Virus record (IMG/VR): IMGVR_UViG_3300031576_000001
Span: 258,634-322,633 of that record
Reading direction: 5' to 3' (one strand)
DNA: 64,000 nucleotides
Within the stretch, counting starts at the first letter, position 1. The number at the start of each line of letters is the position of its first letter. Below the pieces are notes generated by a model, which saw only the letters and a program-made list of their open reading frames with translations, made no database searches and was not told where the DNA came from. Shown here in pieces: positions 5,804 through 51,719 of this stretch. A program made the position numbers and the translations under genes.

Positions 5804-6230
5804 GCCTCTCTTGGTACACCACCGAAGCCAGGGGAGAGGCTAAGTTGTAGTTCTTGGACTTGGAGTCGCTCTTGGGGGTCACCGTGACCCCCATCTTTTG
5901 GTGGTACGCCAGCGCCACGTCCGTAAAGTCGCGTTGGTTGTCTGGGTCTTGGTAACCCAAGAAACCATCAAGGAAGTCTGCCGGTACCAGGGAGTCCTCA
6001 AAGGGGATCATCCCTACCAGGCTCTCTTGCCAGCCTGCCTTACTGCCCAGGTAGACCTCAATATGCGCCCAGAGGGCGACAGGGTAGTTGGCGATCCCTA
6101 GCTCCCCCTCGACCACGGCGGTGAGAACGGCAGACCACCCTCTTGGCGCTGGCACCGTGGTTATCGTGCGTACCTCCCCCAGGCTTACCTTCGGTGCCTT
6201 CGGGGGCTTGTCCTTCTTCTTTTTACCCAT
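5790..6230 (-). CDS. hypothetical protein
   Basis: ATG overlaps the MazG TTA (TTATG); own in-frame TTA at 5841 precedes the next gene's promoter motif. Confidence 0.7.
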   Translation of the reverse strand: MGKKKKDKPPKAPKVSLGEVRTITTVPAPRGWSAVLTAVVEGELGIANYPVALWAHIEVYLGSKAGWQESLVGMIPFEDSLVPADFLDGFLGYQDPDNQRDFTDVALAYHQKMGVTVTPKSDSKSKNYNLASPLASVVYQERHGSL

Positions 6231-6598
6231 AACGCCAGCTTTCCGCCGTGCTTGAAAGCTCTCTTGCGGTTGACCTCGTGCTTGAGCCGGACAGCCCTGT
6301 CCATATCCACCCCGAGGGTCTTGGCCGTGTCCAGCGTGCGAATGAGAATATCCGCTAGCTCCTCCTCGGCGTTGGTTAGCTCAGGGTTCTTGTCGCAAGG
6401 CTCGTACAGCTTGCCCTTGCGCACTACTTCCCAAAGCTCCGAGACCTCGCCGGTCAGGTTGGTCAGGAAAATGGCCATCCTTTCCACAGAAGGCTTCGTC
6501 TGCAAAGCACTCTCGTGGTGAAACCCGTGCTCAAGGGCATTCTGAAACACCACGTCCGCTACAGCGTTGAAATTCGTCGGGGGTAGGGGCTCACTCAT
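6185..6598 (-). CDS. MazG-like nucleotide pyrophosphohydrolase
   Basis: GEVSELWE and EEELADILIRTLD motifs; C-terminal K...NR.R...HGGK followed two codons later by TTA (6230-6232). Confidence 0.85.
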   Translation of the reverse strand: MSEPLPPTNFNAVADVVFQNALEHGFHHESALQTKPSVERMAIFLTNLTGEVSELWEVVRKGKLYEPCDKNPELTNAEEELADILIRTLDTAKTLGVDMDRAVRLKHEVNRKRAFKHGGKLALWVKRRRTSPRRHRR

Positions 6599-29662: not shown

Positions 29663-30151
29663 ATGTTCACACCCAATCCTCAACAAGCTGCATTTTTCTC
29701 TGACCCTGACTGTCACGCTAGCCTTCGGTGGTTGCATAACGAAGAGGTGAGTAACCGCGGGACAGGACGCACCACGGCGTTGGCGCACCTCTACTTCCGG
29801 CAAGCCTTTCTCGCTCCCGGCGTCTCGGTCAAGGTCTATGACCACCACGACACAGAGAGGCACCACAAGGGCCTAGCAAGGTTTATCCTTGATTTCGTCA
29901 AGGGTAGAGACTTCGCGGGCTACTGGATAGCCGTTGACCTACACGCGCACACCCTCGCCGCACTAGTGTCCAGCGTGACGAAACCAATGACTGCACCTAG
30001 AGAGGCGACGACTTACATACACACGACTCCAGCGACGTACAGCTCCACAGGTGTAGTTACCGTAGGAGCAACGATAAGCTACGGGGCTACCCACACGTTT
30101 ACAACCATCCCCGTGAGCACTAACTTCGTACCGTTCACAATTACGCATTTA
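29663..30151 (+). CDS. hypothetical protein (ends at TTA; fused to the radical SAM ORF under table 11)
   Basis: RGTGRTT P-loop-like motif; the only in-frame TTA of the 562-aa ORF is at 30149, followed by a GGTGTA motif and a new ATG. Confidence 0.6.
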
Positions 30152-32087: not shown

Positions 32088-33695
32088 ATGCCATCGTGGT
32101 TTAGCGAGAACACGTCAGACAAGCAGCACTACAATCCAGGGCAAGTTTACTCCAACTTGCAGACCCTCTTTGAGAAGGACTGCCTGCGAAACGGTCGCAC
32201 CTTCTCCGCTTGGGATCTGTCGGGTATACTCAGGGACGGAAGCTCCTTCGCTGCGTGGGAGAAGAAAATAAAGTCCCTGGGTTTTGGCCGAGCTAGCTTT
32301 TACCGCTCGGACTGGGCTGAACTCACACCGGAACCGGAGAGCGAAACCGTGGTCACCGTGGTCTACCTCGGGGACCACGGGGTGGTGCAATACCAGGGTC
32401 CGCTGACCGGCACCCTTCGAGCCGTCAACGTGATCGCTAACGTGAGCGCTACCGTGAGCCAAGACAAGACGCGCGAAGAGATGCTCACGTTTCTCAGGGC
32501 TAACCTGCAAGAGCGACCTTCCAAAGAGACGGGGGCGCCCTTCCTGGCGACGACCGACTCACGCGGGGGGTTGACCTTCGAGCAAAACCTGACCAGCGTG
32601 GGCTCTCCCTGGGTACCCACTAACTACAGCAAAGAGGTTCGGGCAGCTTACAGCGCCATGCTACCTGCCTTCGCCTCTAAGAACCCCTCGGGCAAGCTGG
32701 TCATCCTCAACGGAGCGCCTGGCACTGGCAAGTCCTTCCTGCTTCAGGCATTGCTGTACGACACCCGGGATCGGTTTTGCCATATCATCATGCCGCCCTA
32801 CATGATGCACAACATCACCGGACCCCAAACCATGTCCGCCCTGCTTCAGCACCGGAACGAAAACACGCGCAAGCGTACCGTCTTCTTCCTAGAGGACGCC
32901 GAGGACGCTCTCTTGGTACGTCAGGGCGATAACCACAGCGCGGTGAGCAACATCCTCAACCTGAGCGACGGTATGATGGGGAAGATCCTCGACATACGGA
33001 TCGTTGCCACCACCAACCGCAAGAAGGTTGAGCTAGACCCCGCCCTAATCCGTGATGAGCGCCTCTTGGCTCATATCTCCGTGGACCCCCTCTCCCCAGA
33101 GGAAGCCCGGGAAGCCTTTGATCACGTCTACCCAGAGAAGGCGGGTCAGTACACCCCGCACTACCCAACCAGCCTGGCTACCGTCTACAAGACAGCCAAG
33201 TCAATGGGGTGGACAGCACCAGAGCCCGCCGATAAGCCCGCTTCTCGCGGTGTGGTGACCCAGCGCCAGATCGACCGAGACGAGGCTAAGGTCCGGGGAC
33301 AATCCAAGGTAGGCGTTAGGGCACAACCGCGCAAACCCCACCTGGCAAGCGCCCCCAAGTTACCCCAGGCTAGGCGTCTCTTCGACAACGCAGCGGACCA
33401 CGCCCCACTCTATGCACCGGAGAAGGTAAAGGGCGATAACCGCCTCAGTGGGGTAGGAAGGCCAGAGGGTTCCCTCGTCGTCGGTCGCCCACCAGTTTGT
33501 GGTGTCGCTGCGTATGTCCGCCAGGATCTCCTCAAGCGTCTGCGGACTCTCGCTACTTACCCAGTGAAAGATGCCCCCCGTCTCTCGCTCAAACCGTTTG
33601 TGCTCAGCCGGGTCTGCAACGCGCAAGAAGGCGCCAGCAAGGACACGTTGAAATCGGGCACGCACAACGGGCGTCATCGGGTATCCCCTGGGTAG
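32088..33695 (+). CDS. AAA+ ATPase
   Basis: Walker A GAPGTGKS, Walker B FFLEDAE, TTN and LDPALIR; in-frame TTA at 33360 (proposed end 33362). Confidence 0.9.
   Translation: MPSWFSENTSDKQHYNPGQVYSNLQTLFEKDCLRNGRTFSAWDLSGILRDGSSFAAWEKKIKSLGFGRASFYRSDWAELTPEPESETVVTVVYLGDHGVVQYQGPLTGTLRAVNVIANVSATVSQDKTREEMLTFLRANLQERPSKETGAPFLATTDSRGGLTFEQNLTSVGSPWVPTNYSKEVRAAYSAMLPAFASKNPSGKLVILNGAPGTGKSFLLQALLYDTRDRFCHIIMPPYMMHNITGPQTMSALLQHRNENTRKRTVFFLEDAEDALLVRQGDNHSAVSNILNLSDGMMGKILDIRIVATTNRKKVELDPALIRDERLLAHISVDPLSPEEAREAFDHVYPEKAGQYTPHYPTSLATVYKTAKSMGWTAPEPADKPASRGVVTQRQIDRDEAKVRGQSKVGVRAQPRKPHLASAPKLPQARRLFDNAADHAPLYAPEKVKGDNRLSGVGRPEGSLVVGRPPVCGVAAYVRQDLLKRLRTLATYPVKDAPRLSLKPFVLSRVCNAQEGASKDTLKSGTHNGRHRVSPG
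33360..33677 (-). CDS. hypothetical protein
   Basis: ATGA-coupled to 33674-33895; its TAA pairs with the AAA gene's TTA. Confidence 0.65.
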   Translation of the reverse strand: MTPVVRARFQRVLAGAFLRVADPAEHKRFERETGGIFHWVSSESPQTLEEILADIRSDTTNWWATDDEGTLWPSYPTEAVIALYLLRCIEWGVVRCVVEETPSLG

Positions 33696-38469: not shown

Positions 38470-38533
38470 ACCCCCCACCTTACACCAAGACCGAGAAGCC
38501 CCACGCCCCCGTAAGCACAAAGAAGCCTACCCC

Positions 38534-40079: not shown

Positions 40080-41114
40080 TCAGAGCTTCTTGCAGCCTGC
40101 GACGTACCACTGGCGAGCCGCGTCGGATACGGCTTTCTGAGCCGTTTTCGCGTCTAGCCCGGAACAAGCTAGCTCAGCGTTGCACTCCTTGAGCACGTCC
40201 GCCGTCAACCAAGCCAGAAAGACACCGGTTTTCTTGGGGTCGAAGCTACCCCCACAGACCACAGAAAGCCCCTGCTCCAGGCGGGCGCCCGTGACGACCA
40301 AAGAGGCGAAATCGGCGGCGTTTCGGGTTACCGTGGCGCTGGCTTGGGCTGGCGCCGTCCTGGTGACCGCGCAAGCGTGGTGCTTCTCGCCCTTGGCTTT
40401 GAAGCAGAGGTTGGAAAAGCGCTTATAATCGCTGCCCAGAGAGGGCTCGTCAGCCTCAGCCCCCGAGGGCACGGGGTAGAAGACCAGCCCTTCGCCCGTG
40501 CCCTCTACGCCAAAGGTGTTGCGTACCCAGGGGTCGCACTCCTCGACAGCGAGGACGTGCTGGTTGATCCGGTCTAGCGTGGGCTGTAGAGCTTCGTCGG
40601 AAGCCGCCCAGTTCACCATGTAGGCTTCGCCGTCCTGGTACCAGGGGAGCACGTAGCAGCCGGGGATGACCTGGGTCAGCCGGGAGAGGGTCTCTGGATC
40701 GTCGAGGAAGTCGATAACCCCAGGGTGGTCAACGAGGCGGGCAGCAAAGACGGCAAAGACCTTCGCTTTGAGGAGGTTGACGGCGACGCCCTTCTGAATG
40801 CCGGGTCCACACCACTCCCCGAAGAGGACCAGGGCGCCCGCCAGAGGAGCCAGCTTGGCTATCGTTGCCTGGCGCTCGTAGACCCACCTAGCAAAGCCCG
40901 CATTGTCCGAGTCCAGGGAGAGCACGCTGGTGCGGGACAGGGCAGTTACCCCCTCTTGGCTGATCTTTATGCCGGCGTTGGTGCCATGGAGCTTCACCTT
41001 GGCGCGGTAGCTCACGGTTGACGCCCCCTGGTCAAGAAGCTCCGGGTAGAGGGTCAGCTTGCGCCTGGCATTGTGAAAGTTGTCAATCTCGGTCCACTTG
41101 ACGTGCTCTGTCAT
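40080..41114 (-). CDS. RNA ligase, Rnl2 family
   Basis: KLHGTN (motif I), FGEWCGPGIQKG, GEGLVF, FKAKGEKH. Confidence 0.85.
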   Translation of the reverse strand: MTEHVKWTEIDNFHNARRKLTLYPELLDQGASTVSYRAKVKLHGTNAGIKISQEGVTALSRTSVLSLDSDNAGFARWVYERQATIAKLAPLAGALVLFGEWCGPGIQKGVAVNLLKAKVFAVFAARLVDHPGVIDFLDDPETLSRLTQVIPGCYVLPWYQDGEAYMVNWAASDEALQPTLDRINQHVLAVEECDPWVRNTFGVEGTGEGLVFYPVPSGAEADEPSLGSDYKRFSNLCFKAKGEKHHACAVTRTAPAQASATVTRNAADFASLVVTGARLEQGLSVVCGGSFDPKKTGVFLAWLTADVLKECNAELACSGLDAKTAQKAVSDAARQWYVAGCKKL

Positions 41115-41173
41115 GCCCGAGAGGGTACACCGCCCGGCGCTCAACCTCTCAGGGGGACCACCACCCCCTTTCA

Positions 41174-41216
41174 AAAACCCTCACGCTGATACGGCAAACC
41201 CAAAGAAATTGAAAGC
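41174..41216. repeat. 43-bp inverted repeat, left arm
   Basis: Reverse complement of 42113-42155 with 1 mismatch. Confidence 0.9.
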
Positions 41217-41870: not shown

Positions 41871-42049
41871 TCAGTACACACACAAATGAGGATCGGCTAG
41901 GAGCACCGGTATAGGATTTGAATTTTTTACCCGGTGCCCTGTCTCAGTACACACACAAATGAGGATCGGCTAGGAGCACCGGTATAGGATTTGAATTTTT
42001 TACCCGGTGCCCTGTCTCAGTACACACACAAATGAGGATCGGCTAGGAG
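41871..42049. repeat. 73-bp perfect tandem repeat (about 2.45 copies)
   Basis: Units start at 41871, 41944 and 42017. Confidence 0.95.
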
Positions 42050-42112
42050 GGTGGGGTGTGTTTTGAATTTTGGGTTGGAGGCTGTTTTCGATTACAGTGT
42101 GGCTGTAGCTGC

Positions 42113-42155
42113 GCTTTCAATTTCTTTGGGTTTGCCGTATCAGTGTGAGGGTTTT
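42113..42155. repeat. 43-bp inverted repeat, right arm
   Basis: Reverse complement of 41174-41216. Confidence 0.9.
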
Positions 42156-42305
42156 CGTGAGGGGGTTTCGGGTGAGACGGGGGGTCTCTATTTTCTACCC
42201 CGTTTTCTTTTTGGGTGGGTGTGGGGGTGGCTTCCTGAATTTTGGGTGGCAGAGAACGTAGCCTCGGGTGTTTTTTCTGCGAGGAGTGGTGTACCTAGTG
42301 TGCCC

Positions 42306-43133
42306 ATGGGATGTTTTCCTCTAGCGGGTCAAGACGAGTCCTTGAGCGGTCCTTACGTACCGTGTGTGTACGTGGCTTCCAGGCTACAGTACGCTTCCAT
42401 GTGGCGATCTTACCGAGAGGGTTGGGCTACGTCGGTAAGGGTGACCTCACGGTGGCTCGACGTAGTGGGCGAGGTGTCTGACAAGGGTGGGTTGTGGCAG
42501 GGCCTTATGGCGGACATAGTGAGGTCGGACGTTTTGCTAGCCTACGGGGAGGCTGGCGAGGTGTGGCAGGGTGCTCTTGTCGAGGTGGGCGCCGCCCTGG
42601 CTCTAGGTAAGCCAGTGCTTGTTGTGGGTGCAGGGGTGAACAGCTTTTGGAGTCACCCGTTGGTTACGCGCTTCGATACGGTAGAGGCTGCCATGGCTTC
42701 GCTTGGGGTACAGCGTCCCCTCTCACCTGCGCCTATTACGGAGTCTGTGAGGGTGATGGTGATGTCCGAGGTACGGCACGTTGGCATGTGGAGGGAGTGC
42801 GTAGCTTCTCAGCCTCCAGGGGTGAGCATAGTCTCTAGGTGGCTGGATGATGTGGCGGTGGGGGACACGGTACGGATGTGGCTTGAGTACCTGGAGGACA
42901 CGAAGCGCGCTCAAGCGGTCATTCTCTATGGTGGCTTTGATGATGACGCGCTATGGGAGCGCCAGCTAGTCAGGGTAGCGGTTCACGTAGCGCTGCTAGC
43001 CAAGAAGCCTGTCTACGTGGTGGGTTCTGGCTCGGGCTCAGAAAATCTAGGCATAGGGGCTTCGCCTCTTGTGCGTCTGTGTGCTTCGGTCGAGGAGGCT
43101 TTTCGGTTGGCTGCCGTTCTGTCTTCCCCTTAA
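42306..43133 (+). CDS. tandem nucleoside 2-deoxyribosyltransferase-like protein
   Basis: VYVAS...TSRW...DIVRSDVLL...GALVEVGAALALGKPV, followed by a degenerate second copy. Confidence 0.75.
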   Translation: MGCFPLAGQDESLSGPYVPCVYVASRLQYASMWRSYREGWATSVRVTSRWLDVVGEVSDKGGLWQGLMADIVRSDVLLAYGEAGEVWQGALVEVGAALALGKPVLVVGAGVNSFWSHPLVTRFDTVEAAMASLGVQRPLSPAPITESVRVMVMSEVRHVGMWRECVASQPPGVSIVSRWLDDVAVGDTVRMWLEYLEDTKRAQAVILYGGFDDDALWERQLVRVAVHVALLAKKPVYVVGSGSGSENLGIGASPLVRLCASVEEAFRLAAVLSSP

Positions 43134-43828
43134 AAGGAAGAACCCCGTAGCCCTTGGGGGTGCCTACGGGGCGCTCGATACCTCTTTGCGTAGAGGCTTG
43201 GTAAGCGAACGATGCTCCGAGAGCGGGGTCTCGTGGGTGTGGTCAGGGTGTATTTGTCACCGCCGCCTGTGGGGGGGCGGGGTGCGTTAGTATTGGTAGC
43301 CCTGTTGATGAGCGCCTGTAGAGCCGCTGTCGAGAGCACGTTACTTTTGGAGACGGGGCTGAGTGTGGTAGGCGTAGCCTTGTATAGGTCGGGGTTATTG
43401 AGGAACCCGTGACCGTCGAGGTCGCCGTCGAGACCAAAGAGGAAGTTGAGTGCAGTCGCCGCGAGAGATCCGCTACCCGTGAGGTTATTGCCGGTACCGA
43501 ACGTGCTCACCAAATTCAGTGGGCTCGTTAGCGTACCGCTCCCTGTTGTGGACCCTGTGTAAGCTAGGGCAAGATTAAGCCCTGTACCGTTGGCGAAGAG
43601 GGTGCCTATACCCGTGGCCGCGCCATTTGCGACGGCGACTAGGTTTAGGTTGACCGCTGTAACTGTGCCCACGCCGGTCGTATTGCCTATGTAGGCGAGG
43701 GCAAGGTTAAGGGGGGCTGACAGAGAACCAGCGCCCGTGGTGCTACCGGCGTAGGTAAGGTCTAGGTTCAAGAAAGCAGAGAGGTCACCATTACCATCTA
43801 GATTACCGTCAAGAAGTTGGTCAGCCAT
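43130..43828 (-). CDS. virion structural protein with G/T/N-rich repeats
   Basis: ~20-aa repeats NLALAY.G.TTG.G.L; CTTATCC motif upstream; in-frame TTA at 43202. Confidence 0.65.
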   Translation of the reverse strand: MADQLLDGNLDGNGDLSAFLNLDLTYAGSTTGAGSLSAPLNLALAYIGNTTGVGTVTAVNLNLVAVANGAATGIGTLFANGTGLNLALAYTGSTTGSGTLTSPLNLVSTFGTGNNLTGSGSLAATALNFLFGLDGDLDGHGFLNNPDLYKATPTTLSPVSKSNVLSTAALQALINRATNTNAPRPPTGGGDKYTLTTPTRPRSRSIVRLPSLYAKRYRAPRRHPQGLRGSSF

Positions 43829-43927
43829 GGGTCAGTACCGTGCGTGCCTCTCAGTGGGTAGCGTAGGGGATAAGAGGCAACCCTCAAAAGGGTTGCTCTG
43901 CTCTGCTCTGCGGTGTAAGGGGAAAGG

Positions 43928-44242
43928 GTGACAACCAAGAAGACGAAAACCACGGAAGCTCAGCGCACCCACGAAGAGGGGGAGTTTGGTACGATTGAAT
44001 GGCGTGCGCAGTTGGAGGGTTCTGCGTTGCACCACAATTGGCACGATCCCTTCGAGGTGATGCTACGCAGGTTGAATCAAGCCACCTCGACCCCCGCTTA
44101 CATCAAGGACTCTGCGATACACGTCCACGATACGCTTCTGCTCGCTCAGTCCATAGCCGTCTCCCTTTTCGGGTGGGACTGGAAAGAACACGTCATGGAC
44201 GTGTACGACCGTATCCAGAAGCACCTCTACCAAAGGGAGTAA
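43928..44242 (+). CDS. hypothetical protein
   Basis: GGTGTA motif at 43912; followed by a hairpin. Confidence 0.6.
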   Translation: MTTKKTKTTEAQRTHEEGEFGTIEWRAQLEGSALHHNWHDPFEVMLRRLNQATSTPAYIKDSAIHVHDTLLLAQSIAVSLFGWDWKEHVMDVYDRIQKHLYQRE

Positions 44243-44726
44243 CCCCTTGTAAGGGTACCCATGAAGAAAGCCCAGGAAGACTGTCTTCCTGGGCTTCTTC
44301 GCGCTTGGCTTGAAGAGGGGCTTCTCTTGGTAAGGTTTCCGAGGCGGTCAAGCTACTTGTCAAGAATTTGGCTACGTCACCGGAGAGCACGGTGCGGGGT
44401 GTGCCCAGCGAGGCGTAGTACAGAAGGTCTCCAGCTACAGCGGCGTTGTACACACCGAAGCCGTTCACGGTGCCCCAGTTGGCGGTTGCGGCGGGGAACG
44501 TCACGTCGGACACCGACGCAGAGCTTCCGGAGACGGGAGTGCCAAAGGTTGTGGACACGTCAACGCGAGCGTAGCTCCCACCAGAGACCTCGACACCACC
44601 CACGCCGCCAGCGCCCGGTGTGGTGGTAAAGAGTGCCATATGCACGCTGGTGGGCTGGGTGATTACGGAGCCTGGGATGAGCCAGAACTTGAGGGTATCG
44701 TTATCGGTAGCGTAGCTCTTGGGCAT
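44193..44726 (-). CDS. phage tail-fibre-associated structural protein
   Basis: ALFTTTP...EVSGGSYAR...FPAATANWGTV..FGVYNA..GDLL; from recall this family ends near LTASET, which is followed by TTA at 44331. Confidence 0.8.
   Translation of the reverse strand: MPKSYATDNDTLKFWLIPGSVITQPTSVHMALFTTTPGAGGVGGVEVSGGSYARVDVSTTFGTPVSGSSASVSDVTFPAATANWGTVNGFGVYNAAVAGDLLYYASLGTPRTVLSGDVAKFLTSSLTASETLPREAPLQAKREEAQEDSLPGLSSWVPLQGVTPFGRGASGYGRTRP
44263..44300. terminator. hairpin between convergent genes
   Basis: AAGCCCAGGAAGAC/GTCTTCCTGGGCTT perfect inverted repeat. Confidence 0.75.
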
Positions 44727-44858: not shown

Positions 44859-45014
44859 ATGACGCACAAGACCAAGACCGGGGGCAAGCTGCCCTTCAAC
44901 AGCAAGCACTACCGGAGCCACCGCGAGGTTCTTCGTGGGTGGGACCGGTGGGGCGCACTGCGTGCGGCTCGTCGAGTCCTCAAGAACAACAGTCTCGCCC
45001 TCTCTCCGCGTTGA
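44859..45014 (+). CDS. small basic protein (51 aa, absent from the ORF track)
   Basis: GGAGG SD and promoter motif; MTHKTKTGGKLPFNSKHY... Confidence 0.6.
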   Translation: MTHKTKTGGKLPFNSKHYRSHREVLRGWDRWGALRAARRVLKNNSLALSPR

Positions 45015-45026
45015 CAGAAGGAAAAC

Positions 45027-45368
45027 ATGCCTACATTTCTCAAACCCACGTCCGTGCCATCGCTCTACAAGCAGGGCTTCTCAGCGATCCAGATCGCCAC
45101 CCAGGTCAACCTGCCCTCGGATGAGGTCTACCGTTTGCTCTGGGAGAGCGGGGCGCGCATGAAGTCTCGCGGGCGGTACTCTGGGGTGTCAGTCTCCACC
45201 CCACCCTTCACCAAGAAGGAGCGTGCCCTGGTGAAGAGGCTCTACCTCTCGGGACAGTCGATGCACGAGGTGGCGCTTCACTTCCGGTGCAGCTTCTACA
45301 AGGTGCGCTCTACGTTGCGGAAGATGAGCGTCCCGGCTCGTCCCGGAGGCTCCCGCCGGGTGAGCTAG
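45027..45368 (+). CDS. double helix-turn-helix protein
   Basis: LYKQGFSAIQIA and LYLSGQSMHEVA. Confidence 0.75.
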   Translation: MPTFLKPTSVPSLYKQGFSAIQIATQVNLPSDEVYRLLWESGARMKSRGRYSGVSVSTPPFTKKERALVKRLYLSGQSMHEVALHFRCSFYKVRSTLRKMSVPARPGGSRRVS

Positions 45369-45407
45369 GGCGCCTGGTTACCACGGCAGGGGTGTACCTT
45401 ACTGAGC

Positions 45408-45812
45408 ATGGCCAGTACCGACAAGGAACCCCTCTCCGTGATGCAGTAAGCCCACCTCCAACGGATCAAAGGGAGGCGTCTCTCGGAGCGCACCCGACAC
45501 GGCAAGCAAGAGCGTAGTTTGCTCACCCGCAAGATGATCACGGTCGAGGGGGCGCTAGCCTCTGGGGTAAAGCTGACCCCTCTTGGTGAAGAGGCATTGC
45601 GTGAGCGTGAGGCTATCGAGGCGGGTAAGCTCCGGGTCCAGGGCACCACGTACCGTTACTTAGGTTTCACCACGCCTGACACTTCCACACAGAAAGGTTT
45701 GCAAGATGAAAGAGATCGCAATTTCCCTGTCGCGCGCCGAGCTACTCGCCGCGAAAGCCTGCTCGGCGGGCATGACGTGGTTCGATACGTGGCCCCGCCT
45801 CTACGACGGTGA
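45408..45812 (+). pseudogene. hypothetical gene with a premature TAA
   Basis: GGTGTACCTT 7 nt before ATG 45408; TAA at 45447 in frame with ORF 45519; TTA at 45660. Confidence 0.55.
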
Positions 45813-46119
45813 CCAAGAGATTGTCGTGCTGTGGTCGCCCCTGGCGATGGTGTGGTCCTTGGCGAACCCGAATAGCAACCAGCGCAGCATGGCCCGTTGG
45901 CTTATCGACAACGGGCTACTGCCCATGTGGTCGCTGAGCGGAGCCTACTTGAGCGGAGCCTACTTGAGCGGAGCCTACTTGAGCGGAGCCGACTTGAGCG
46001 GAGCCTACTTGAGCAGAGCCGACTTGAGCAGAGCCGACTTGAGCGGAGCCTACTACCCCGGGGGCGCCTTGCCGGGGGGGTGGGTGCGCAATAAGGACGG
46101 TTTCCTTGTTAGGGGCTAG
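45706..46119 (+). CDS. pentapeptide repeat protein
   Basis: About 8 near-perfect 15-bp repeats encoding LSGAY/LSGAD/LSRAD. Confidence 0.85.
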   Translation: MKEIAISLSRAELLAAKACSAGMTWFDTWPRLYDGDQEIVVLWSPLAMVWSLANPNSNQRSMARWLIDNGLLPMWSLSGAYLSGAYLSGAYLSGADLSGAYLSRADLSRADLSGAYYPGGALPGGWVRNKDGFLVRG

Positions 46120-46143
46120 GTGCTTGGTGAAAGGGAGTGAGTT

Positions 46144-46566
46144 ATGCTGAAGACACTTGACGAGCTAGACAAAGAGGCTACAGAGGCGGGCGTGTCTGTC
46201 CCTGTGTGGATGCGTAACGCGGTAGCCAAGAACCCAGAGTATGTTTTCTGGGGTCCAGACCAGGATTATATGTGGAAAGCGGGCACCGGGTGGGAGGCTC
46301 CGCTAGCCTTTGCCTCTTGGGGTGACTGCAACCTCGTGCTTGATGACTTGAACGAGGTTGTACACTTCTACTTCGGGGTCAACGGCGATGACCCGGAGAG
46401 GGTGACCTTGACGTTGACCTTCTGGCTACTACACCCCCGCCAGAGCGCCTCTCGGGGGGTCCGTATTCACCGGGTAGCTCAGGCTGACTTGAGAAATGTC
46501 TACCGGTTCCTTCGTCGTGCTGCCACGCGCAACGCTCAGAGGTTTGCCAAGGTGCCTCGTCGGTGA
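46144..46566 (+). CDS. hypothetical protein
   Basis: GGAG SD; GTGA coupling to the next gene. Confidence 0.7.
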   Translation: MLKTLDELDKEATEAGVSVPVWMRNAVAKNPEYVFWGPDQDYMWKAGTGWEAPLAFASWGDCNLVLDDLNEVVHFYFGVNGDDPERVTLTLTFWLLHPRQSASRGVRIHRVAQADLRNVYRFLRRAATRNAQRFAKVPRR

Positions 46567-46952
46567 TTGTTCTCGACGATGCTGAGCCTGCGGTATTGGG
46601 TGAGCCTGTCCAGGCTTACAGGAATCTCTCTGTGCGAGAGGGGCGGCTCTACTCGGTACGGCTCAGGGGACGGTTAATCGCCAGGGTACAAGACCTTTGG
46701 TTGTACGATGTTACTTTTCGTGTGCGACCTGGGGGTCGCAGGCGTGCTTTGCGAGAGGGTGTGCGCAACGTACACGCCTTTGTCTCTGGCACAGCGGTCT
46801 CTCTCATGCCTAGAGGGCTACTGTGGCAGAGAGCCAGCTACAACCCCTTTCTCACTGACCGGGCTGGCTTTTTTCTGGTGGAGTCGGGTCAGGAGGTGTC
46901 TGCGGCACGCTATGCGCGTTTGGACCAGGAGGGGTGCTTTGTGGTGCTGTAG
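46563..46952 (+). CDS. conserved phage hypothetical protein
   Basis: YRNL...YSVR...FRV..GGRRRALREGVRNVHAFV.G...YNP; carries an internal TTA at 46674. Confidence 0.7.
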   Translation: MIVLDDAEPAVLGEPVQAYRNLSVREGRLYSVRLRGRLIARVQDLWLYDVTFRVRPGGRRRALREGVRNVHAFVSGTAVSLMPRGLLWQRASYNPFLTDRAGFFLVESGQEVSAARYARLDQEGCFVVL

Positions 46953-47310
46953 CTTTGCGCTTGTGGGTGGGGCAGTTTGGGTGATAGTGCCCCACCTGTC
47001 CGCAGCTACGGCACTCTTTCTTGCGGGCAGAGCCACCAGCTAGCAACGTGTTGACAGCTTCTTCGCTCCACAGGGAAGTCACCTTACGCCTAGAGTCAGC
47101 GTTGAACAACTTGAGGTAGGCAACGACCAGCTTAACCGTGTCAAGCCAGTAAGGGTCTTCTGCCCTCAAAGCCCGCACAGCGTCGTCAATCTCGCCCAGG
47201 GGGAGCGTCGTCCAGGCTTCGGTGGCTATAGGCTGGTTGTAACGACTGAGGAGGAGGATCGCGGTAAGCCGCTCAGAGAGGGTGGGAGGGGTGGTACTCG
47301 TGTTGGGCAT
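46852..47310 (-). CDS. protein with a C-terminal CCHC zinc knuckle
   Basis: CRSCGQVGHYHPNC. Confidence 0.65.
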   Translation of the reverse strand: MPNTSTTPPTLSERLTAILLLSRYNQPIATEAWTTLPLGEIDDAVRALRAEDPYWLDTVKLVVAYLKLFNADSRRKVTSLWSEEAVNTLLAGGSARKKECRSCGQVGHYHPNCPTHKRKATAPQSTPPGPNAHSVPQTPPDPTPPEKSQPGQ

Positions 47311-47600
47311 GGGGCTAGGCGTAGGTGTCTAAGCTCCTTGACACGGCTGTCAAAGACCAGAGCCGTCAACTGGTTACCCAGGTCGGGCTCGCAGAAGTTA
47401 GCGGTCGCCTTGGGGAGCAGCGCGTAGAGCGCCCCTTCGTTGTCCACCTAGAGGAAGACCAGCGTGTTGCCACCCTCGTACCAAAGGCGAGCTTTCTCCG
47501 GGTTACGCATGACAAACTCTACCAGGGCGTGCATCCCCTGGACAGCCTGAGCGCCAGGGGAGAGGTCGCTACGTGTCACGATGTAAAGTTTCTGTGTCAT
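47226..47600 (-). pseudogene. PTH2-like peptidyl-tRNA hydrolase with an in-frame TAG
   Basis: MTQKLYIVTRSDLSPGAQAVQGMHA...NTLVFL*VDNE...FCEPDLGNQLTA; TAG at 47448-47450. Confidence 0.75.
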
Positions 47601-47811
47601 GGTTTTCTTGGTCTCCTATCACCCCGAGTGGGGTACTACACAGGACACCCACGTCTCCCAAGGCTTTCTTTGCCTTGTCTGCTACCTCGGGCACCCACGT
47701 TGCGAAGATGAGGTAGCCCTCGTTGTCGTTGGACTCTACCCACACGGTTCTGTGCCCAGCACGGATAGCGCGTGTAATTGCCTCGCGGGCTACTTCTTGG
47801 ATGGTTGGCAT
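47569..47811 (-). CDS. small hypothetical protein
   Basis: AGGA SD; part of the operon. Confidence 0.5.
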   Translation of the reverse strand: MPTIQEVAREAITRAIRAGHRTVWVESNDNEGYLIFATWVPEVADKAKKALGDVGVLCSTPLGVIGDQENHDTETLHRDT

Positions 47812-47821
47812 GGTTTCCTTG

Positions 47822-49030
47822 TTAGAAGCGAATGCGCCAGCTTACGGTGATGCTTCGTATCGTGCGCTGCCAGGTGTGTTCCCGGGTTACACGTCGCGTG
47901 TAAAAGGAGTCCTCTGACACCCCTGTAGCCCTCGCGTGACTCTCTATGAAAGCCAACTCACCCACGGTCATGTCGTCTACGTCCTTGTTGAAGTAGGTGC
48001 AGTGCTCCGTGGTGGTGCCAACACTGGCGGTGCTGTCCGGGTTCCACCCAAGGAACTCCTCGTCGGTACGGTCCGGTTGCCCTGGCCGAGGGAAGGGCTT
48101 GACCAGGCTGTAGAACACGGTTTCCAGAGGGAGCCCCCAGTGCGCGCCCGTGACCGCCAGTGTCAACTTGTCCGGGGAGACGTGTAGTTCATGCCAGCGA
48201 AAAGCAGTGCTCTCTTCGCTACCCTGGAAAGAAAAGTCCGCCCGCCGCCCCGTGTCAAGCTCGATGACGGTGCAACCCTGGGTGCGCTCTGCGCAGAGTA
48301 GGTAGTCGTGCCCGTTGGGGTGCGCTATCACCCATGCGAAGGGGAAGTCAGTGTGTTGCCTCCTGACCTCGCACCAAAGCCCTTCAACCTGACCGTGACG
48401 GTAGCAGGGGGTTTTGCTGTCTGCGTCGAGCACCTTGGTAATGGTCAGCGTGTAGGTGCGCCCGTCAGCTCGCGGGGGACTAACGTGCCTCTCTACCTCC
48501 CCGTGGTTCTCTTTGGCAAAGAGGGTGTCAGCATGAAACCCTTCCAAAGCCTTCTGTACTTGCGTGTCCAGCTTGGCTACAGCTTGTCTACGCAAGCCAG
48601 GCGAGAGGCTACGTAGCTCCGGGTAGAGCCTCTTGGCTTCGCCGTAGGGAGTCTTGTTGCGGTGCTGAGTCAGGACTCGCCAGGGCTCATCCGACGTGGG
48701 GTCGAGAGCCTTCTCCAACCCAGGGATACACAAGCTGCGTAGCACGTCGATCTGGCTTACAGAGAGGTTTCGTCCGTGCTGATACTTCGGCTCTTGCCGC
48801 CAGAGGGGGCGCCCACGAAGGATGCTATAGGCTACCAATAGCGCCCTTGTCTGTACCCCGAGGTACTTGCGCTGGGCTTGTAGCTTGCACCGCTCTTGTC
48901 CGGTAGCTGCCCCACCCTCTTTGAGCTTCTGTATCTCAGCGGAGAGGGCTCTACTCCTAGCTTCCCTGACCTTGATCTGCTCTTTGATAAGAGCCCGCAA
49001 GGCGAGCTTGTCTGCGTCGTGGTCTTCCAT
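47822..49030 (-). CDS. hypothetical protein
   Basis: 402-aa ORF; GGTGTA motif at 49070. Confidence 0.75.
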   Translation of the reverse strand: MEDHDADKLALRALIKEQIKVREARSRALSAEIQKLKEGGAATGQERCKLQAQRKYLGVQTRALLVAYSILRGRPLWRQEPKYQHGRNLSVSQIDVLRSLCIPGLEKALDPTSDEPWRVLTQHRNKTPYGEAKRLYPELRSLSPGLRRQAVAKLDTQVQKALEGFHADTLFAKENHGEVERHVSPPRADGRTYTLTITKVLDADSKTPCYRHGQVEGLWCEVRRQHTDFPFAWVIAHPNGHDYLLCAERTQGCTVIELDTGRRADFSFQGSEESTAFRWHELHVSPDKLTLAVTGAHWGLPLETVFYSLVKPFPRPGQPDRTDEEFLGWNPDSTASVGTTTEHCTYFNKDVDDMTVGELAFIESHARATGVSEDSFYTRRVTREHTWQRTIRSITVSWRIRF

Positions 49031-49290
49031 GGTAACAATCTCTCGTGTTTGGGTGCCTGGCGGAAGGGGTACACCGAGAGAGCCACGGGGAGGACCACGC
49101 TTGCGGGGGAGCTAGAAGAAGGCTTTCATGGTGAGCGTAGGGTAACCAGGGTTAGAGGTTGGTACAAGGGGTGCGCCCTGCGGGAGTTGAACCCGCGCAA
49201 AAGAACTTTAGAGGCTCTGTACTCTACCTTTGAGTTAAAGGCGCGTTGTGTGGGCTTCTGCTCGATCTCACGAGGTAGCCCGTTGTGAAG

Positions 49291-49734
49291 TCAGTCTTCC
49301 GAGAGGCGGTCAGGGCGCCTGTGGTCCTGGCGAGCCTTCCCGCCGCCCCCGCTGCGCTTACCCTTCCCACCACCGCCGCCTCCACGGTCACCGCCGCCCC
49401 CGCCGCCAAAGTCACGGCGAGGGGGTGGGCGAGGGTTGGCAGCGCGGCGGGCGGTCTCGGTCTCGGAGATCCACTGGTCCGCCTGGGTGATGAGGTCGGC
49501 GGCGCGGTAGAGGTCCGTCCTGACGATGCCATCCTCGAAGAAGGCGCGCACGTTGAGGTAGGGGGCACCGGTACCGTCCTTGCGTGTCCGACCGACCGAG
49601 ACGGAGTACAGAACCCCCCTGTCCGTGGTGGCCGTCTTGACGGTACAGATGACCTCACCATCGGTAAAGGTCTGGGCTACCTCCCAAACGAGGGGAGGGC
49701 GGGAGGGATCGGCAGAAGAGGCGTAGTCGCTCAT
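49291..49734 (-). CDS. hypothetical protein with an R/G-rich tail (possible nucleic-acid binding)
   Basis: GGGGGGDRGGGGGGKGKR tail; GGTGTA motif at 49768. Confidence 0.6.
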   Translation of the reverse strand: MSDYASSADPSRPPLVWEVAQTFTDGEVICTVKTATTDRGVLYSVSVGRTRKDGTGAPYLNVRAFFEDGIVRTDLYRAADLITQADQWISETETARRAANPRPPPRRDFGGGGGGDRGGGGGGKGKRSGGGGKARQDHRRPDRLSED

Positions 49735-49754
49735 GGCTTTGTCTTGGTTCTCTC

Positions 49755-50696
49755 TCAAAAGGCGTTATACACCGGCAAGGGTAAGCTGTCGGCAAGCGTA
49801 AGCAGTTGGTGGTTCAAGGCGATCAAGGCGTCGCGGTCTTCTAGAGGCTCCAAGAGGGTGCTGTCTACGCCCTCCAAGCCGTAGAACGCCCCGAGGAGAG
49901 CCCCGACCATGCTAGCAATGGTGTCAGTATCACCCCCTCTACGGATGGCTAGCTCGATACCCTCCTTAAAGGAGGTAGCTACCGCGGCCAGCGCAAAGAC
50001 AACCGCCACGTCTGCTGTGACCCCTCTAGGTGGGAGAGCCTTGAGGTACCCCGCCAGGGAGTGCCTGGGCAAGGGCTGAGGGAAGTTCTCAAAAATGTCG
50101 TGTAGTTTCCCGGCTGGCAGCATGGTAGCCACCTTCTTAGCCAGGTAGGTAGGTGTGGTTACCTGTAGGGCTAGTAGACCCACCCCAAGAGCGATAGCCA
50201 TGCTGCCGTGCCTTGCCTCGGGGGACTGGTGGGTCAACGAAGCGTCCACGTCGGCGTATCGCGCGGCTAGGTCCAGGTCATGCCGGAAAGCCAGCCCGAT
50301 GGGCGATACCCTCATGGCGGTACCGTTGCCCTGTGAGCCAGCGACCCCACAGGTTGTCGGGCTCTTGGTGCGTAGGTACTTCAAGATAGCCTCACGCACG
50401 GTGTTCCCCATCCCCCTGCACGAACCGGACTGAAACCACTTGTAGTAGCTCTCCATGACGGCGCTGGGGTTGAACGTCTTCTCTTGGACGAGGGACTTGG
50501 CAAGCGCCACGGTCATCTGGGTGTCGTCCGTGACCTGACCTGGCTCAATCATGAGCCAATTGTTGCGCGTGGGTAGGTAGGAGTGCCCATCCCAGTCAAG
50601 CAAGAGGGGGCTGAGGCTCATCCTCCCCTCGAAAGGTGCGCCCAGTGCGTCCCCTACGGCAACCCCGACGAGCGGGGCAGGCGTGCGGTCTTTCAC
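49755..50696 (-). CDS. ADP-ribosylglycohydrolase (DraG/ARH family)
   Basis: GDALGAPFE, TDDTQM, GNGTAMR, SLTH and GGDTDT; in-frame TTA at 49782. Confidence 0.93.
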   Translation of the reverse strand: MKDRTPAPLVGVAVGDALGAPFEGRMSLSPLLLDWDGHSYLPTRNNWLMIEPGQVTDDTQMTVALAKSLVQEKTFNPSAVMESYYKWFQSGSCRGMGNTVREAILKYLRTKSPTTCGVAGSQGNGTAMRVSPIGLAFRHDLDLAARYADVDASLTHQSPEARHGSMAIALGVGLLALQVTTPTYLAKKVATMLPAGKLHDIFENFPQPLPRHSLAGYLKALPPRGVTADVAVVFALAAVATSFKEGIELAIRRGGDTDTIASMVGALLGAFYGLEGVDSTLLEPLEDRDALIALNHQLLTLADSLPLPVYNAF

Positions 50697-50926
50697 AGGT
50701 CCATTCCTTCCGCTAGTCGGGCTTGCTCAGGGTTGAGCGTCCCGCGGTCCCTGGCAACTTTGACAAGCTGCAAAAACTCCCTGGTTAGATGGTCCTCCGT
50801 GAGCGCCGCGAGGATAGCGTCCAAGTCGCCAGTCGCAAAACCAGAAACCAGCCCGTCGAGGTAATCTCTTCGGAGAATGTAACCCTCTCGGTACAGCTTT
50901 ACCCAGCGGTCCACTTGAAGCGTCAT
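50693..50926 (-). CDS. small hypothetical protein
   Basis: GTGA-coupled to the ADP-ribosylglycohydrolase gene. Confidence 0.55.
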   Translation of the reverse strand: MTLQVDRWVKLYREGYILRRDYLDGLVSGFATGDLDAILAALTEDHLTREFLQLVKVARDRGTLNPEQARLAEGMDL

Positions 50927-51089
50927 TGTACAATCCAGGCTTTCTCGGCGGTCCAGTCGTGAAGCCAGTCCCCCCAGCGCGTGGGAAGCACTTCCATGAG
51001 GGGGTGTGCTACGCAGTTATGTAGGACGCGCCAGACACGCTTTTCCAGGTGGAGCATTACACCTATCATAGAGGGTATAATAGCACACC

Positions 51090-51719
51090 ATGACAGATTG
51101 GAGCAAGTTCCTTGAAAATCTGCTCCCGGGCATCATTACAGGAGCCGGATCGGCGGTTACGACCGTCTACACGTTCGTCCAGGGCTTGCGAAAACAAGTC
51201 ACGGAGCTTGAAGTCAAGGTTGCCGCCCTGGACACGGCTTTGAAAGCCCTGGATGGTAGGGTGGGTGTGTACGACCCCGTTTCTGGGAGTCGCTCTGGTT
51301 TGTTCAAGGGACTCTCAGACCTCTCTGGTACCGTGGTGACCATTGATGCTCGCGTGGGGCACTTCGACTCCAACACGGGGGCGCGCACGGGAATGCTTGG
51401 CGTTCTTGACGCCCTCTCGGACAAGCTGGAGCGCGAAGCCAACCAAGCCCAGAGAGGGTCTATCGACACCCAGGCTATTGAGGAGCGTATTGAGCGTAGG
51501 GTCCAGGTCAGGCTAGACCTCTTGGAGAGGCGCCTTGCGGAGCTAACGGAAATTGTGAACCAATGTGTGACCTACGAAAACTACGAAGTGACGAGCCAGC
51601 GCCGAGCGGAGGAACTGGTCAAGATCAGGGAGAGTGTAGCCTCCCTGGCGGGGATGCTCTCCGTGGTCAAGGGCTACCTGGACCCCACGCCAGCCCCGAA
51701 GAAGGGGGTGCCAAGGTGA
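51090..51719 (+). CDS. membrane-anchored coiled-coil protein
   Basis: Hydrophobic N-terminus, heptads, internal duplication LDGRVGVYD/IDARVGHFD. Confidence 0.65.
   Translation: MTDWSKFLENLLPGIITGAGSAVTTVYTFVQGLRKQVTELEVKVAALDTALKALDGRVGVYDPVSGSRSGLFKGLSDLSGTVVTIDARVGHFDSNTGARTGMLGVLDALSDKLEREANQAQRGSIDTQAIEERIERRVQVRLDLLERRLAELTEIVNQCVTYENYEVTSQRRAEELVKIRESVASLAGMLSVVKGYLDPTPAPKKGVPR

What the first reader, a model, noticed from the sequence alone, without database searches (positions are those of the whole stretch)
45408..47600. Local cluster of premature stops, including the only internal TTA found
Within about 2 kb there is a TAA at 45447, a TAG at 47448 and an internal TTA at 46674 (GR-L-IA). 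I recall Val at that position in homologues, so GTA>TTA is possible. Either this island is decaying and the TTA is a nonsense mutation, or TTA is context-dependent. This one is followed by A, whereas the 22 terminal TTAs are followed by G (12), C (7) or T (3).
Basis: partly seen in the sequence, partly recalled or inferred. Interest (0 to 1): 0.6.

Follow-up and report, generated by a model that had tools for sequence, protein, structure and literature searches.

The report
In-frame TAG and TTA in a TTA-terminating phage
In a 322-kb phage where the leucine codon TTA behaves like a fourth stop codon, two neighbouring accessory genes each carry one in-frame terminator: a TAG that a nearby phage suppressor tRNA could read, and the genome's one clearly internal TTA; the third reported stop (TAA) is not premature.

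Summary
All three codons are at the stated coordinates and in the stated frames.

**TAG (47450-47448, minus strand).** It splits an otherwise intact PTH2-family peptidyl-tRNA-hydrolase-like gene. An amber-suppressor tRNA (anticodon CUA) lies 1.6 kb upstream on the same strand.

**TTA (46674).** It is codon 38 of a Phage_L5_gp82-family gene that is homologous on both sides of the codon.

**TAA (45447).** It ends a 13-codon mini-ORF in a spacer. Nothing shows it is premature.

In-frame TTA is almost absent from gene bodies (5, against 222 CTA). It piles up in the last codons of ORFs (21 of 29; p about 8e-11). The pattern replicates in 50 genes outside the window (p about 8e-8). TTA also sits where homologues end or where a conserved gene begins. 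TTA most likely terminates translation here, a change I know only from organelles.

**The +4-base argument fails.** TTAA is rare genome-wide, and two terminal TTA-A occur outside the window.

**Open point.** Whether the gp82-like gene is dead or leaky cannot be decided. Both in-frame codons are identical in a second assembly.

The parts
45408..45449 (+). 13-codon mini-ORF (ATG 45408) ending in TAA at 45447-45449; lies in the spacer after the HTH gene 45027-45368
   Evidence: The sequence after the TAA (45450-45518) scores -0.05 per codon. No family hits. In-frame TTAs at 45378 and 45399 precede it (read directly).
45534..45662 (+). Small ORF (42 codons from ATG 45534, or 47 from TTG 45519) closed by an in-frame TTA at 45660-45662, 43 nt before the pentapeptide-repeat gene (ATG 45706)
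   Evidence: Coding score is 0.37-0.39 per codon up to the TTA and -0.095 after it. TTA is codon 85 of the 45408 frame.
46563..46952 (+). Phage_L5_gp82-family gene (129 codons under the standard code)
   Evidence: PF25735 E 1.1e-22, residues 13-127. phrog_586. tblastn hits in phages GBK1, Mx1 and f2b1 span residues 12-126. Alignment A2.
46674..46676 (+). In-frame TTA, codon 38 of the gp82-like gene; the one clearly internal TTA in the window; followed by A
   Evidence: It aligns with Val in 3 of 3 homologues. Identical in the second assembly.
47226..47600 (-). PTH2-family (peptidyl-tRNA hydrolase 2-like) gene. N piece 47451-47600, C piece 47229-47447
   Evidence: phrog_1866 E 1e-9 for the N piece. 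251 homologues. Both pieces align to one family. The family profile hits PDB 2zv3 Pth2 at E 1e-11, and 37 of 40 members hit PF01981.
47448..47450 (-). In-frame TAG (amber), codon 51 of the PTH2-like gene
   Evidence: The alignment column is mostly A/S/T, sometimes E, V, K or R. Identical in the second assembly.
47265..47267 (-). In-frame TTA, codon 112 of the PTH2-like ORF; probable real terminator, giving a 111-residue product
   Evidence: Full-length family members run from about 100 to 150 residues, many of them 103-125. The last 28 codons of the ORF, within which the TTA lies, score about -0.4 per codon in this frame and overlap the next gene (my arithmetic).
49170..49244 (-). tRNA gene with anticodon CUA (amber suppressor), same strand as and upstream of the PTH2-like gene
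   Evidence: ARAGORN. Rfam tRNA 55.5 bits, full length. Short variable loop and A73 (read). Isotype unresolved.
47584..47586 (-). Terminal TTA (codon 76 of 80) of the gene just upstream of the PTH2-like gene
6230..6232 (-). Reference case of a terminating TTA. Gene 6185-6658 ends '...HGGKLA' + TTA, and the TTA overlaps the next gene's ATG (TTATG)
   Evidence: The homologue in relative L009 ends '...HGGKLA' + TAG at exactly this position.
30149..30151 (+). Reference case. TTA separates a 162-codon ORF from a radical-SAM gene that starts 10 codons later at ATG 30183
   Evidence: More than 100 homologues of 365-405 aa cover only the C-terminal 69% of the ORF and start with the same 'MRS' N-terminus.
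33360..33362 (+). Reference case. TTA at codon 430 of the 540-codon AAA-ATPase ORF; the same three bases are the TAA stop of a converging minus-strand ORF
   Evidence: The closest homologues listed are about 340-480 aa and end about there. The 110-codon tail scores 0.036 against 0.251 for the body, and is antisense to ORF 33360-33677, which scores 0.168.

Best explanation
The window is the last 64 kb of a complete, about 322.6-kb phage genome. In this phage TTA is not used as a leucine codon. It behaves as a fourth terminator, alongside TGA, TAG and TAA.

Against that background, the 2-kb stretch holds two genuine in-frame terminators in two adjacent, converging accessory genes.

(1) TAG at codon 51 of a PTH2-like gene. 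The codon sits at a variable, tolerant position, and the rest of the gene is intact. I infer that the phage's own tRNA-CUA, 1.6 kb upstream on the same strand, reads it. The 111-residue protein would then be made only when that suppressor is expressed and charged, and it would end at the in-frame TTA at 47267.

(2) TTA at codon 38 of a gp82-like gene, probably derived from GTA (Val). If TTA terminates as it does elsewhere, this is a recent nonsense change. It would truncate the product to 37 residues unless some read-through occurs.

The TAA at 45447 is the ordinary end of a 13-codon mini-ORF in a spacer. It is not part of the phenomenon.

Shown:
- the positions and frames of the three codons;
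- the family membership of both genes;
- the suppressor tRNA gene;
- the stop-like statistics of TTA and its placement relative to homologues.

Inferred:
- that TTA actually releases the peptide;
- the mechanism of release. By analogy with organelles, this would be a class-I release factor with changed codon reading plus no tRNA-Leu(UAA) activity;
- that tRNA-CUA suppresses the TAG;
- the fate of the gp82-like product.
For: **TTA as terminator**
- Window gene bodies hold 5 in-frame TTA against 136 and 84 in the other two frames. A/T-ending codons are otherwise used freely: CTA 222, ATA 71, AAA 109.
- 21 of 29 in-frame TTAs lie in the last 45 codons of their ORFs, against a 17% baseline (p 8e-11). 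No other codon exceeds 30%. Only frame 0 shows this.
- The pattern replicates in 50 database-called genes outside the window: 11 of 15 TTAs in the last 25 codons (p 8e-8).
- The homologue's stop aligns exactly with a TTA, at '...HGGKLA'.
- A TTA sits 10 codons before the conserved start of a radical-SAM gene.
- The AAA-ATPase family ends at about the TTA, and the tail is antisense to a better-scoring ORF.
- The coding score drops from 0.22 to 0.00 per codon after terminal TTAs.
- The +4 base is G in 12 of 21 terminal TTAs, against 24% genome-wide. Canonical TAA and TAG stops show a similar G preference.
- Relatives use TTA at conserved Leu columns, so the change is lineage-specific.

**TAG in the PTH2-like gene**
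- establish the internal stop and the family.
- The suppressor tRNA is supported.
- PTH2-like genes of relatives sit in or next to tRNA arrays. Two of them lie directly beside a suppressor tRNA: CUA in L004 and UUA in L038.

**gp82-like gene:**

**Not an assembly error:** a second, differently permuted assembly is identical at both codons.
Against: - No protein-level data exist, so termination at TTA is inferred from sequence statistics and homologue ends only.
- No release-factor gene and no statement about tRNA-Leu(UAA) can be made for the roughly 210 kb of the genome that I did not read. The host is unknown.
- One tail after a terminal TTA (2864-2977, minus strand) keeps a high coding score and GC3 of 0.87.
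- The gp82-like gene is well conserved after its TTA, which also fits TTA being read as Leu there.
- TAG still ends about 12 genes in the window, with no excess of back-up stops after it. A strong constitutive suppressor would therefore be costly.
- The PTH2-like genes of the four fetched viral relatives are intact, so the TAG is a young, lineage-specific change. It could simply be a nonsense mutation.
- The second assembly may come from the same sample.
Confidence: 0.6

Rival explanations
1. Decaying island. Both the TAG and the TTA are plain inactivating nonsense mutations in dispensable accessory genes, and the suppressor tRNA has nothing to do with the PTH2-like gene.
For: The two lie 774 bp apart in a stretch of small accessory genes: HTH, pentapeptide repeat, gp80-like and gp82-like. 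The PTH2-like genes of four relatives are intact, so the TAG is young. The copy in L004 has its two halves in different frames, so the family does break. TAG is still a common terminator in the window.
Against: Each gene has a single lesion, no frameshift and all family motifs downstream. The segment after the TAG has the highest coding score of the region, 0.40 per codon. A cognate suppressor tRNA lies on the same strand 1.6 kb away. PTH2-like genes sit next to suppressor tRNAs in two other phages. Both codons are fixed in two assemblies.
Confidence: 0.25
2. TTA is context-dependent. It terminates when followed by G, C or T and is read as Leu when followed by A, so the gp82-like protein is made full length.
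For: The TTA at 46674 is the only in-frame TTA-A in window genes. The aligned position is hydrophobic (Val) in homologues, so Leu would fit. A stable hairpin starts about 18 nt downstream (z -2.2).
Against: TTAA is only 6% of TTAN in the window, so its absence among 22 terminal sites is expected. Two terminal TTA-A sites exist outside the window. The hairpin is one of five folds tested and is weak after correction.
Confidence: 0.08
3. TTA is an ordinary but extremely rare Leu codon. The C-terminal clustering reflects tolerated slow decoding near gene ends, and all ORFs run to their canonical stops.
For: TTA is Leu in relatives. The post-TTA coding score (about 0) lies above the out-of-frame baseline of -0.17 to -0.20. 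One tail looks coding.
Against: This reading would require three unusual products: a 110-residue extension encoded antisense to another ORF, a fusion of an unrelated 162-residue ORF to a radical-SAM enzyme, and the fused 299-residue ORF in locus L027. In each case a TTA sits exactly at the junction. The exact match to a homologue's stop also argues against it. Other rare or A/T-rich codons show no such clustering.
Confidence: 0.05
4. Sequencing or assembly artefact at the three codons.
For: The sequence is a metagenome assembly, and no reads were inspected.
Against: The window is identical to the public contig. An independent MEGAHIT assembly with a different break point agrees at TTA 46674, TAG 47448 and the tRNA anticodon. 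A third sample carries the same 50-residue product, and a contig of similar size carries the same 129-residue product.
Confidence: 0.02

Closest known systems
Leu(UUA)-to-stop reassignment in organelles: labyrinthulean/thraustochytrid mitochondria (NCBI table 23), peDinoflagellate plastids, and Marsupiomonadales and Pseudoscourfieldia mitochondria (PMC12574857)
   Same: UUA is absent from conserved internal positions and sits where homologues have a stop codon. It ends a large share of genes, about 20 of 70 here. No cognate tRNA was seen in the sequence examined. That paper used the same kind of evidence.
   Different: Those cases are organelle genomes with identified changes in RF2 or RF1a. 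Here the genome is a huge phage, no altered release factor has been found, the host is unknown, and close relatives still read TTA as Leu.
Stop-codon-recoded phages with suppressor tRNAs: TAG to Gln (code 15) and TGA to Trp (code 4) (bioRxiv 10.1101/2021.08.26.457843; PMC9523058)
   Same: A phage-encoded suppressor tRNA with anticodon CUA, and an in-frame TAG in a phage gene.
   Different: Recoded phages carry many in-frame TAGs, typically in late genes. Here there is one in 64 kb, and TAG still ends about 12 genes. The direction of the larger change here is sense-to-stop, not stop-to-sense.
PTH2 peptidyl-tRNA hydrolases (Pfam PF01981; PDB 2zv3, 1rzw, 1q7s)
   Same: The family profile matches over about 100 of 114 positions. 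37 of 40 family members match PF01981.
   Different: This is a divergent phage subfamily associated with tRNA arrays. The catalytic residues were not checked, and the window copy is interrupted by TAG.
bldA-dependent TTA codons in Streptomyces (my own knowledge, not tested here)
   Same: A very rare TTA codon whose decoding depends on one tRNA and can gate expression of particular genes.
   Different: In Streptomyces, TTA codons are sense codons found anywhere in regulated genes. Here they sit at gene ends, where homologues stop.
Mycobacteriophage L5 gp82 family (PF25735)
   Same: The family match runs nearly full length, residues 13-127 of 129.
   Different: The family has no known function. 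The window copy carries a TTA where homologues have Val.

Membership tests
Genetic code with UUA as terminator (as in NCBI table 23) | UUA absent from conserved internal positions of genes | tested here: met
   5 in-frame body TTAs against 136 and 84 out of frame. None in the 1282-codon marker ORF. Replicated outside the window. The single exception is 46674.
Genetic code with UUA as terminator (as in NCBI table 23) | UUA occurs where homologues have their stop codon or where the next gene begins | tested here: met
   Exact for gene 6185-6658 against L009. Approximate for the AAA ATPase. Junction before the radical-SAM start. Junction in L027.
Genetic code with UUA as terminator (as in NCBI table 23) | No tRNA able to read UUA (anticodon UAA) | tested here: inconclusive
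   The only tRNA in about 110 kb of this genome is tRNA-CUA. About 210 kb and the host were not examined. Relative L035 does encode tRNA-Leu(UAA).
Genetic code with UUA as terminator (as in NCBI table 23) | Class-I release factor with altered codon-reading motif | not tested
   No RF-1 or PCRF Pfam hit among genes called across the scanned ~110 kb (window plus about 46 kb outside it). The rest of the genome and the host were not available.
Genetic code with UUA as terminator (as in NCBI table 23) | Peptide release at UUA shown at protein level | not testable with these tools
   Needs proteomics or in vitro translation.
PTH2 peptidyl-tRNA hydrolase family (PF01981) | Sequence or profile match over the domain | tested here: met
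   Profile of A3 against PDB 2zv3 at E 1.1e-11, positions 5-104 of 114. 37 of 40 members hit PF01981. The N piece alone gives only E 0.027.
PTH2 peptidyl-tRNA hydrolase family (PF01981) | Catalytic residues and hydrolase activity | not tested
   Residue-by-residue mapping to solved Pth2 structures was not done.
Amber suppressor tRNA | Complete cloverleaf with anticodon CUA | tested here: met
   ARAGORN. Rfam RF00005 at 55.5 bits, model positions 1-71 of 71.
Amber suppressor tRNA | Expressed, aminoacylated and active in suppression; identity of the amino acid | not testable with these tools
   Nearest relatives' tRNAs are Lys-CUU and Glu-CUC at 70% identity, which does not decide the isotype.
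Stop-codon-recoded phage (code 15, TAG as sense) | Many in-frame TAGs across genes, and TAG not used as terminator | tested here: not met
   One convincing in-frame TAG in 64 kb. TAG ends about 12 genes.
Phage_L5_gp82 family (PF25735) | Near-full-length profile match above the curated cut-off | tested here: met
   80.6 bits against a cut-off of 27; residues 13-127 matching profile positions 5-119 of 120.
Pseudogene (decayed gene) | Several lesions: frameshifts, multiple stops, loss of conserved motifs | tested here: not met
   One in-frame terminator per gene, frame kept, motifs kept, coding score kept. A very recent inactivation cannot be excluded.

The most novel reading that the evidence does not exclude
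This phage runs a four-terminator code in which TTA has been captured as a stop. That would be the first sense-to-stop reassignment I know of outside organelles. In this reading, the lone in-frame TAG and the lone in-frame TTA in the adjacent PTH2-like and gp82-like genes are not damage. They are switches: each protein is made only when a matching tRNA is active (the phage tRNA-CUA for TAG, a residual tRNA-Leu(UAA) for TTA). The tRNA-handling PTH2-like enzyme would then be tied to the decoding state of the infected cell.
Probability: 0.2. Interest if true: 0.92.

Novelty: new variant of a known kind. Interest (0 to 1): 0.8.

Why it matters
The known code changes in phages turn stop codons into sense codons. 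A sense codon turned into a terminator is known to me only from mitochondria and plastids, and two full-text searches found no report of one for a phage.

If TTA really terminates here, three things follow.
- Standard gene callers mis-annotate this genome. They fuse genes and add false tails, for example the 562-aa, 540-aa and 299-aa database products.
- Code evolution by codon loss and capture could be studied in a clade where relatives still read TTA as Leu.
- There must be a factor, phage or host, that releases peptides at UUA, and it can be looked for.

The amber-interrupted PTH2-like gene beside an amber suppressor gives a simple, testable case of suppressor-dependent expression. PTH2-like genes lying beside suppressor tRNAs in other huge phages add to that case.

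Tried and rejected
**DNA and protein searches that gave little**
- DNA searches of 45000-49400 against 50,697 phage records, near and distant modes, found no match.
- A homologue search with the 73-residue C piece of the PTH2-like gene found nothing. The N piece worked.
- Single-protein scans of the viral collection with the 402-aa, 562-aa and 1196-aa proteins found only the contig itself. Alignment A3 was too diverse for a scan.
- The metagenome scan for the gp82 TTA site returned only the same contig.

**Search for tRNAs and release factors**
- I walked about 46 kb outside the window looking for a tRNA array, a tRNA-Leu(UAA) or a release factor. None turned up.

**Inconclusive or rejected ideas**
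- Isotype of the tRNA-CUA by similarity to relatives' tRNAs: inconclusive.
- The +4-base rule for TTA: rejected.
- Back-up stops after TAG as a sign of adaptation to a suppressor: no difference from TGA or TAA.
- Downstream RNA structure as a read-through signal: nothing at the TAG (z +0.45), weak at the TTA (z -2.2).
- Paralogues of either gene in the 110 kb held: none.
- The minus-strand ORF 45365-45649 as an alternative gene under the TAA region: rejected, score -0.06 per codon.
- The idea that terminal TTAs are only the reverse complements of opposite-strand TAA stops. That holds at 17612/17629 and 33360 but not for most sites.
Full report
**What the window is.** The window equals, base for base, the last 64 kb of IMG/VR contig IMGVR_UViG_3300031576_000001 (JGI Ga0247727_10000022, 322,633 bp). 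A second assembly of the same phage exists: ENA ERZ27247320 k141_3047311, 322,662 bp. It is broken at a different place, so the genome is complete and circular or circularly permuted. The G+C content is about 59%. DNA searches against 50,697 phage records find nothing. Protein relatives are uncultured huge phages of 78-529 kb. The host is unknown.

**The TAG.** On the minus strand, ORF 47600-47226 carries TAG as codon 51 (47450-47448).
- Among all stops in all six frames of the window, this one has the strongest coding potential on both sides.
- The 50-residue N piece hits phrog_1866 and 251 proteins in the representative library.
- In an alignment with 38 of those proteins, the N piece and the C piece fit one family, with exactly one column between them. 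The downstream motifs 'F.EPD....LTA' and 'L.LA' are kept.
- A profile of that alignment hits solved Pth2 peptidyl-tRNA hydrolases (2zv3, E 1e-11), and 37 of 40 members hit PF01981.
- The column at the TAG is variable: mostly A, S or T; S in the closest homologues; E, V, K or R in others.
- The segment after the TAG has the highest coding score of the neighbourhood, 0.40 per codon.

**The suppressor tRNA.** The only tRNA in the window has anticodon CUA (49244-49170). It lies on the same strand, 1.6 kb upstream of the PTH2-like gene. It has a short variable loop and A73. Its amino-acid identity could not be assigned.

In relatives, PTH2-like genes lie inside or beside tRNA arrays: 19 tRNAs in L002 and 26 in L035. 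Two lie directly beside a suppressor tRNA, CUA in L004 and UUA in L038. Those relatives' genes have no in-frame stop at this position, so the TAG is lineage-specific.

**The TTA at 46674.** ORF 46563-46952 matches Pfam Phage_L5_gp82 over residues 13-127 (E 1e-22). Three phage homologues (Geobacillus GBK1, Myxococcus Mx1, phage f2b1) align across the codon. Conserved residues lie on both sides, and the coding score is the same before and after the codon (0.16 and 0.17).

**The TAA at 45447.** It ends a 13-codon ORF in the 338-nt spacer after the HTH gene. The 23 codons after it score as non-coding. Coding signal starts near 45519/45534 and runs at 0.37-0.39 per codon to an in-frame TTA at 45660, then drops to -0.095. 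There are no family hits. I see no evidence that this TAA interrupts a gene.

- *Position in ORFs.* With a self-trained gene set of 70 ORFs, 21 of 29 in-frame TTAs fall in the last 45 codons, against a 17% baseline (p 8e-11). The next most skewed codon reaches 30%.
- *Frame specificity.* TTA counts in body/tail are 8/21 in frame 0, 142/21 in frame 1 and 89/16 in frame 2.
- *Not a general A/T avoidance.* Gene bodies use CTA 222 times, ATA 71 and AAA 109, but TTA only 5 times.
- *Coding score.* After terminal TTAs it falls from 0.22 to 0.00 per codon.
- *Tail lengths.* They average about 19 codons, near the roughly 22 expected from the out-of-frame stop density. Both figures are my arithmetic.
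- *Next base.* Terminal TTAs are followed by G in 12 of 21 cases against 24% genome-wide. Canonical TAA and TAG stops show a similar G preference.

**Homologue evidence for termination at TTA.**
- Gene 6185-6658 ends '...HGGKLA' + TTA, followed by a 14-codon tail. Its homologue in relative L009 ends '...HGGKLA' + TAG. The TTA also overlaps the next gene's ATG.
- The 562-codon ORF 29663-31351 is really two genes. More than 100 radical-SAM homologues of 365-405 aa start with the same 'MRS' N-terminus at ATG 30183. The TTA lies 10 codons upstream, and no canonical stop lies between.
- The closest homologues of the AAA ATPase are about 340-480 aa and end about where the TTA at codon 430 lies. The 110-codon tail is antisense to a better-scoring ORF, whose TAA stop is the reverse complement of that same TTA.

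**Replication outside the window.** I used 50 genes as called by JGI or ENA in about 46 kb of the same genome. Of 15 in-frame TTAs, 11 lie in the last 25 codons, against 12.3% expected (p 8e-8). Frame counts are 4/11, 70/4 and 50/9. One 299-residue database product there is a gene, then TTA, then two codons, then an ATG-started small gene that itself ends in TTA.

**Relatives.** In relatives, TTA codons of the large marker protein sit in conserved Leu columns, so they read TTA as Leu. The window phage has none in 1282 codons. One relative with 47.6% G+C (L023) has 1 body TTA against 182 TTG, 78 CTA and 66 ATA.

**Re-examining the other 'internal' TTAs.** The remaining in-frame body TTAs are explained as follows:
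- 8347, 38514 and 44792 lie upstream of better-supported start codons. 27133 is codon 2 of the start that both I and the JGI annotation call; I did not check for a start further downstream.
- 30149 lies at a gene junction.
- 33360 and 44333 lie at likely true gene ends.

**The context idea.** TTAA is strongly under-represented in the window: 44 observed against 222 expected, and only 6% of TTAN. None among 22 terminal TTAs is therefore unremarkable. Outside the window, two terminal TTAs are followed by A. A hairpin starts about 18 nt after 46674 (z -2.2), but it is one of five folds tested and is weak evidence.

**Interpretation.** TTA most likely ends translation in this phage. By my count it closes about 20 of 70 window genes, second only to TGA. 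The nearest precedent is UUA-to-stop in organelles, where changed RF2 or RF1a proteins are held responsible (PMC12574857). Two full-text searches found no report of a sense-to-stop change in a phage. I found no release-factor gene, and no tRNA other than tRNA-CUA, in the roughly 110 kb examined. The mechanism therefore remains inferred.

Under this reading the PTH2-like ORF would give a 111-residue product: TAG read through, TTA at 47267 as terminator. That fits its family. The gp82-like gene carries a terminator at codon 38.

For the TAG, a suppressor-dependent gene is the better explanation, because a cognate tRNA is present and the gene is intact. For the TTA, a recent Val-to-terminator change is the simplest reading. 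Whether the product is lost or made at a low level cannot be told from sequence.

Both codons are identical in the second assembly. The only difference across 45823-51600 is one 15-bp unit of the pentapeptide repeat.

**Verdict.** The underlying phenomenon deserves attention well beyond this 2-kb stretch.

Noticed in passing
window 45935-45949 (within repeat 45940-46040): The pentapeptide-repeat gene contains a 15-bp tandem repeat. The second assembly has one unit fewer and breaks its contig nearby at window 45823.
   Followed up: partly
L004:923-1334: In this relative the two halves of the PTH2-like gene are in different frames. The switch lies at the sequence CTTTTAG, which holds an in-frame TTA in one frame and a TAG in the other. 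A tRNA-CUA follows 120 nt downstream. It could be a frameshift, a pseudogene or an assembly error.
   Followed up: partly
L038:3001-3639: An intact PTH2-like gene in a 324-kb, 42% G+C phage contig is followed about 420 nt downstream by a tRNA with anticodon UUA, an ochre suppressor.
   Followed up: no
L023 (IMGVR_UViG_3300015610_000633), whole 20.7-kb locus: This relative has 47.6% G+C but almost no in-frame TTA: 1 in 5116 body codons, against TTG 182, CTA 78 and ATA 66. TTA is common out of frame (55 and 49). This may be a TTA-unassigned stage.
   Followed up: partly
window 33360-33362 and 17612-17629: Converging genes share terminators. The plus-strand TTA is the reverse complement of the minus-strand TAA, so one triplet would stop both strands.
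   Followed up: partly
window 29663-31351, 32073-33695; L027:10001-10900: Public gene calls give 562-aa, 540-aa and 299-aa products that are probably fusions or carry false tails, because TTA is read as Leu.
   Followed up: yes
window 44193-44726 and 46563-46952: A gene hitting Pfam Gp80 (PF23140) lies 1.8 kb from the gp82-like gene. The family names suggest neighbouring genes of mycobacteriophage L5; that link rests on my own knowledge and was not tested.
   Followed up: no
window about 19745-19963: In the near-identical strain from SRR8536157, a 72-residue gene at the equivalent place hits the eIF-1a/IF-1 fold (PF01176). This suggests a phage translation-initiation-factor-like protein. My gene set has a gap there.
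   Followed up: no
window 40080-41174, 4735-5295, 49755-50696: The window also holds RNA-repair and modification genes: an RNA ligase (phrog_548, PF09414), a 2',5' RNA ligase/LigT-like protein and an ADP-ribosylglycohydrolase. They may relate to tRNA damage and repair.
   Followed up: no
window 38001-40000 and 42001-44000: Strong local GC skew, -0.39 and +0.24, against about 0 elsewhere. Unexplained.
   Followed up: no
window 803-1231: After the TAA that ends the large marker gene (803-805), the same frame scores as coding again from ATG 845. It is probably a separate gene in the same frame, but this was not checked.
   Followed up: no
window 2864-2977 (minus strand): The 38-codon tail after the terminal TTA of gene 2861-3814 keeps a high coding score (0.23) and GC3 of 0.87, unlike other tails. 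An in-frame ATG lies 9 codons after the TTA. It may be a small separate ORF.
   Followed up: no
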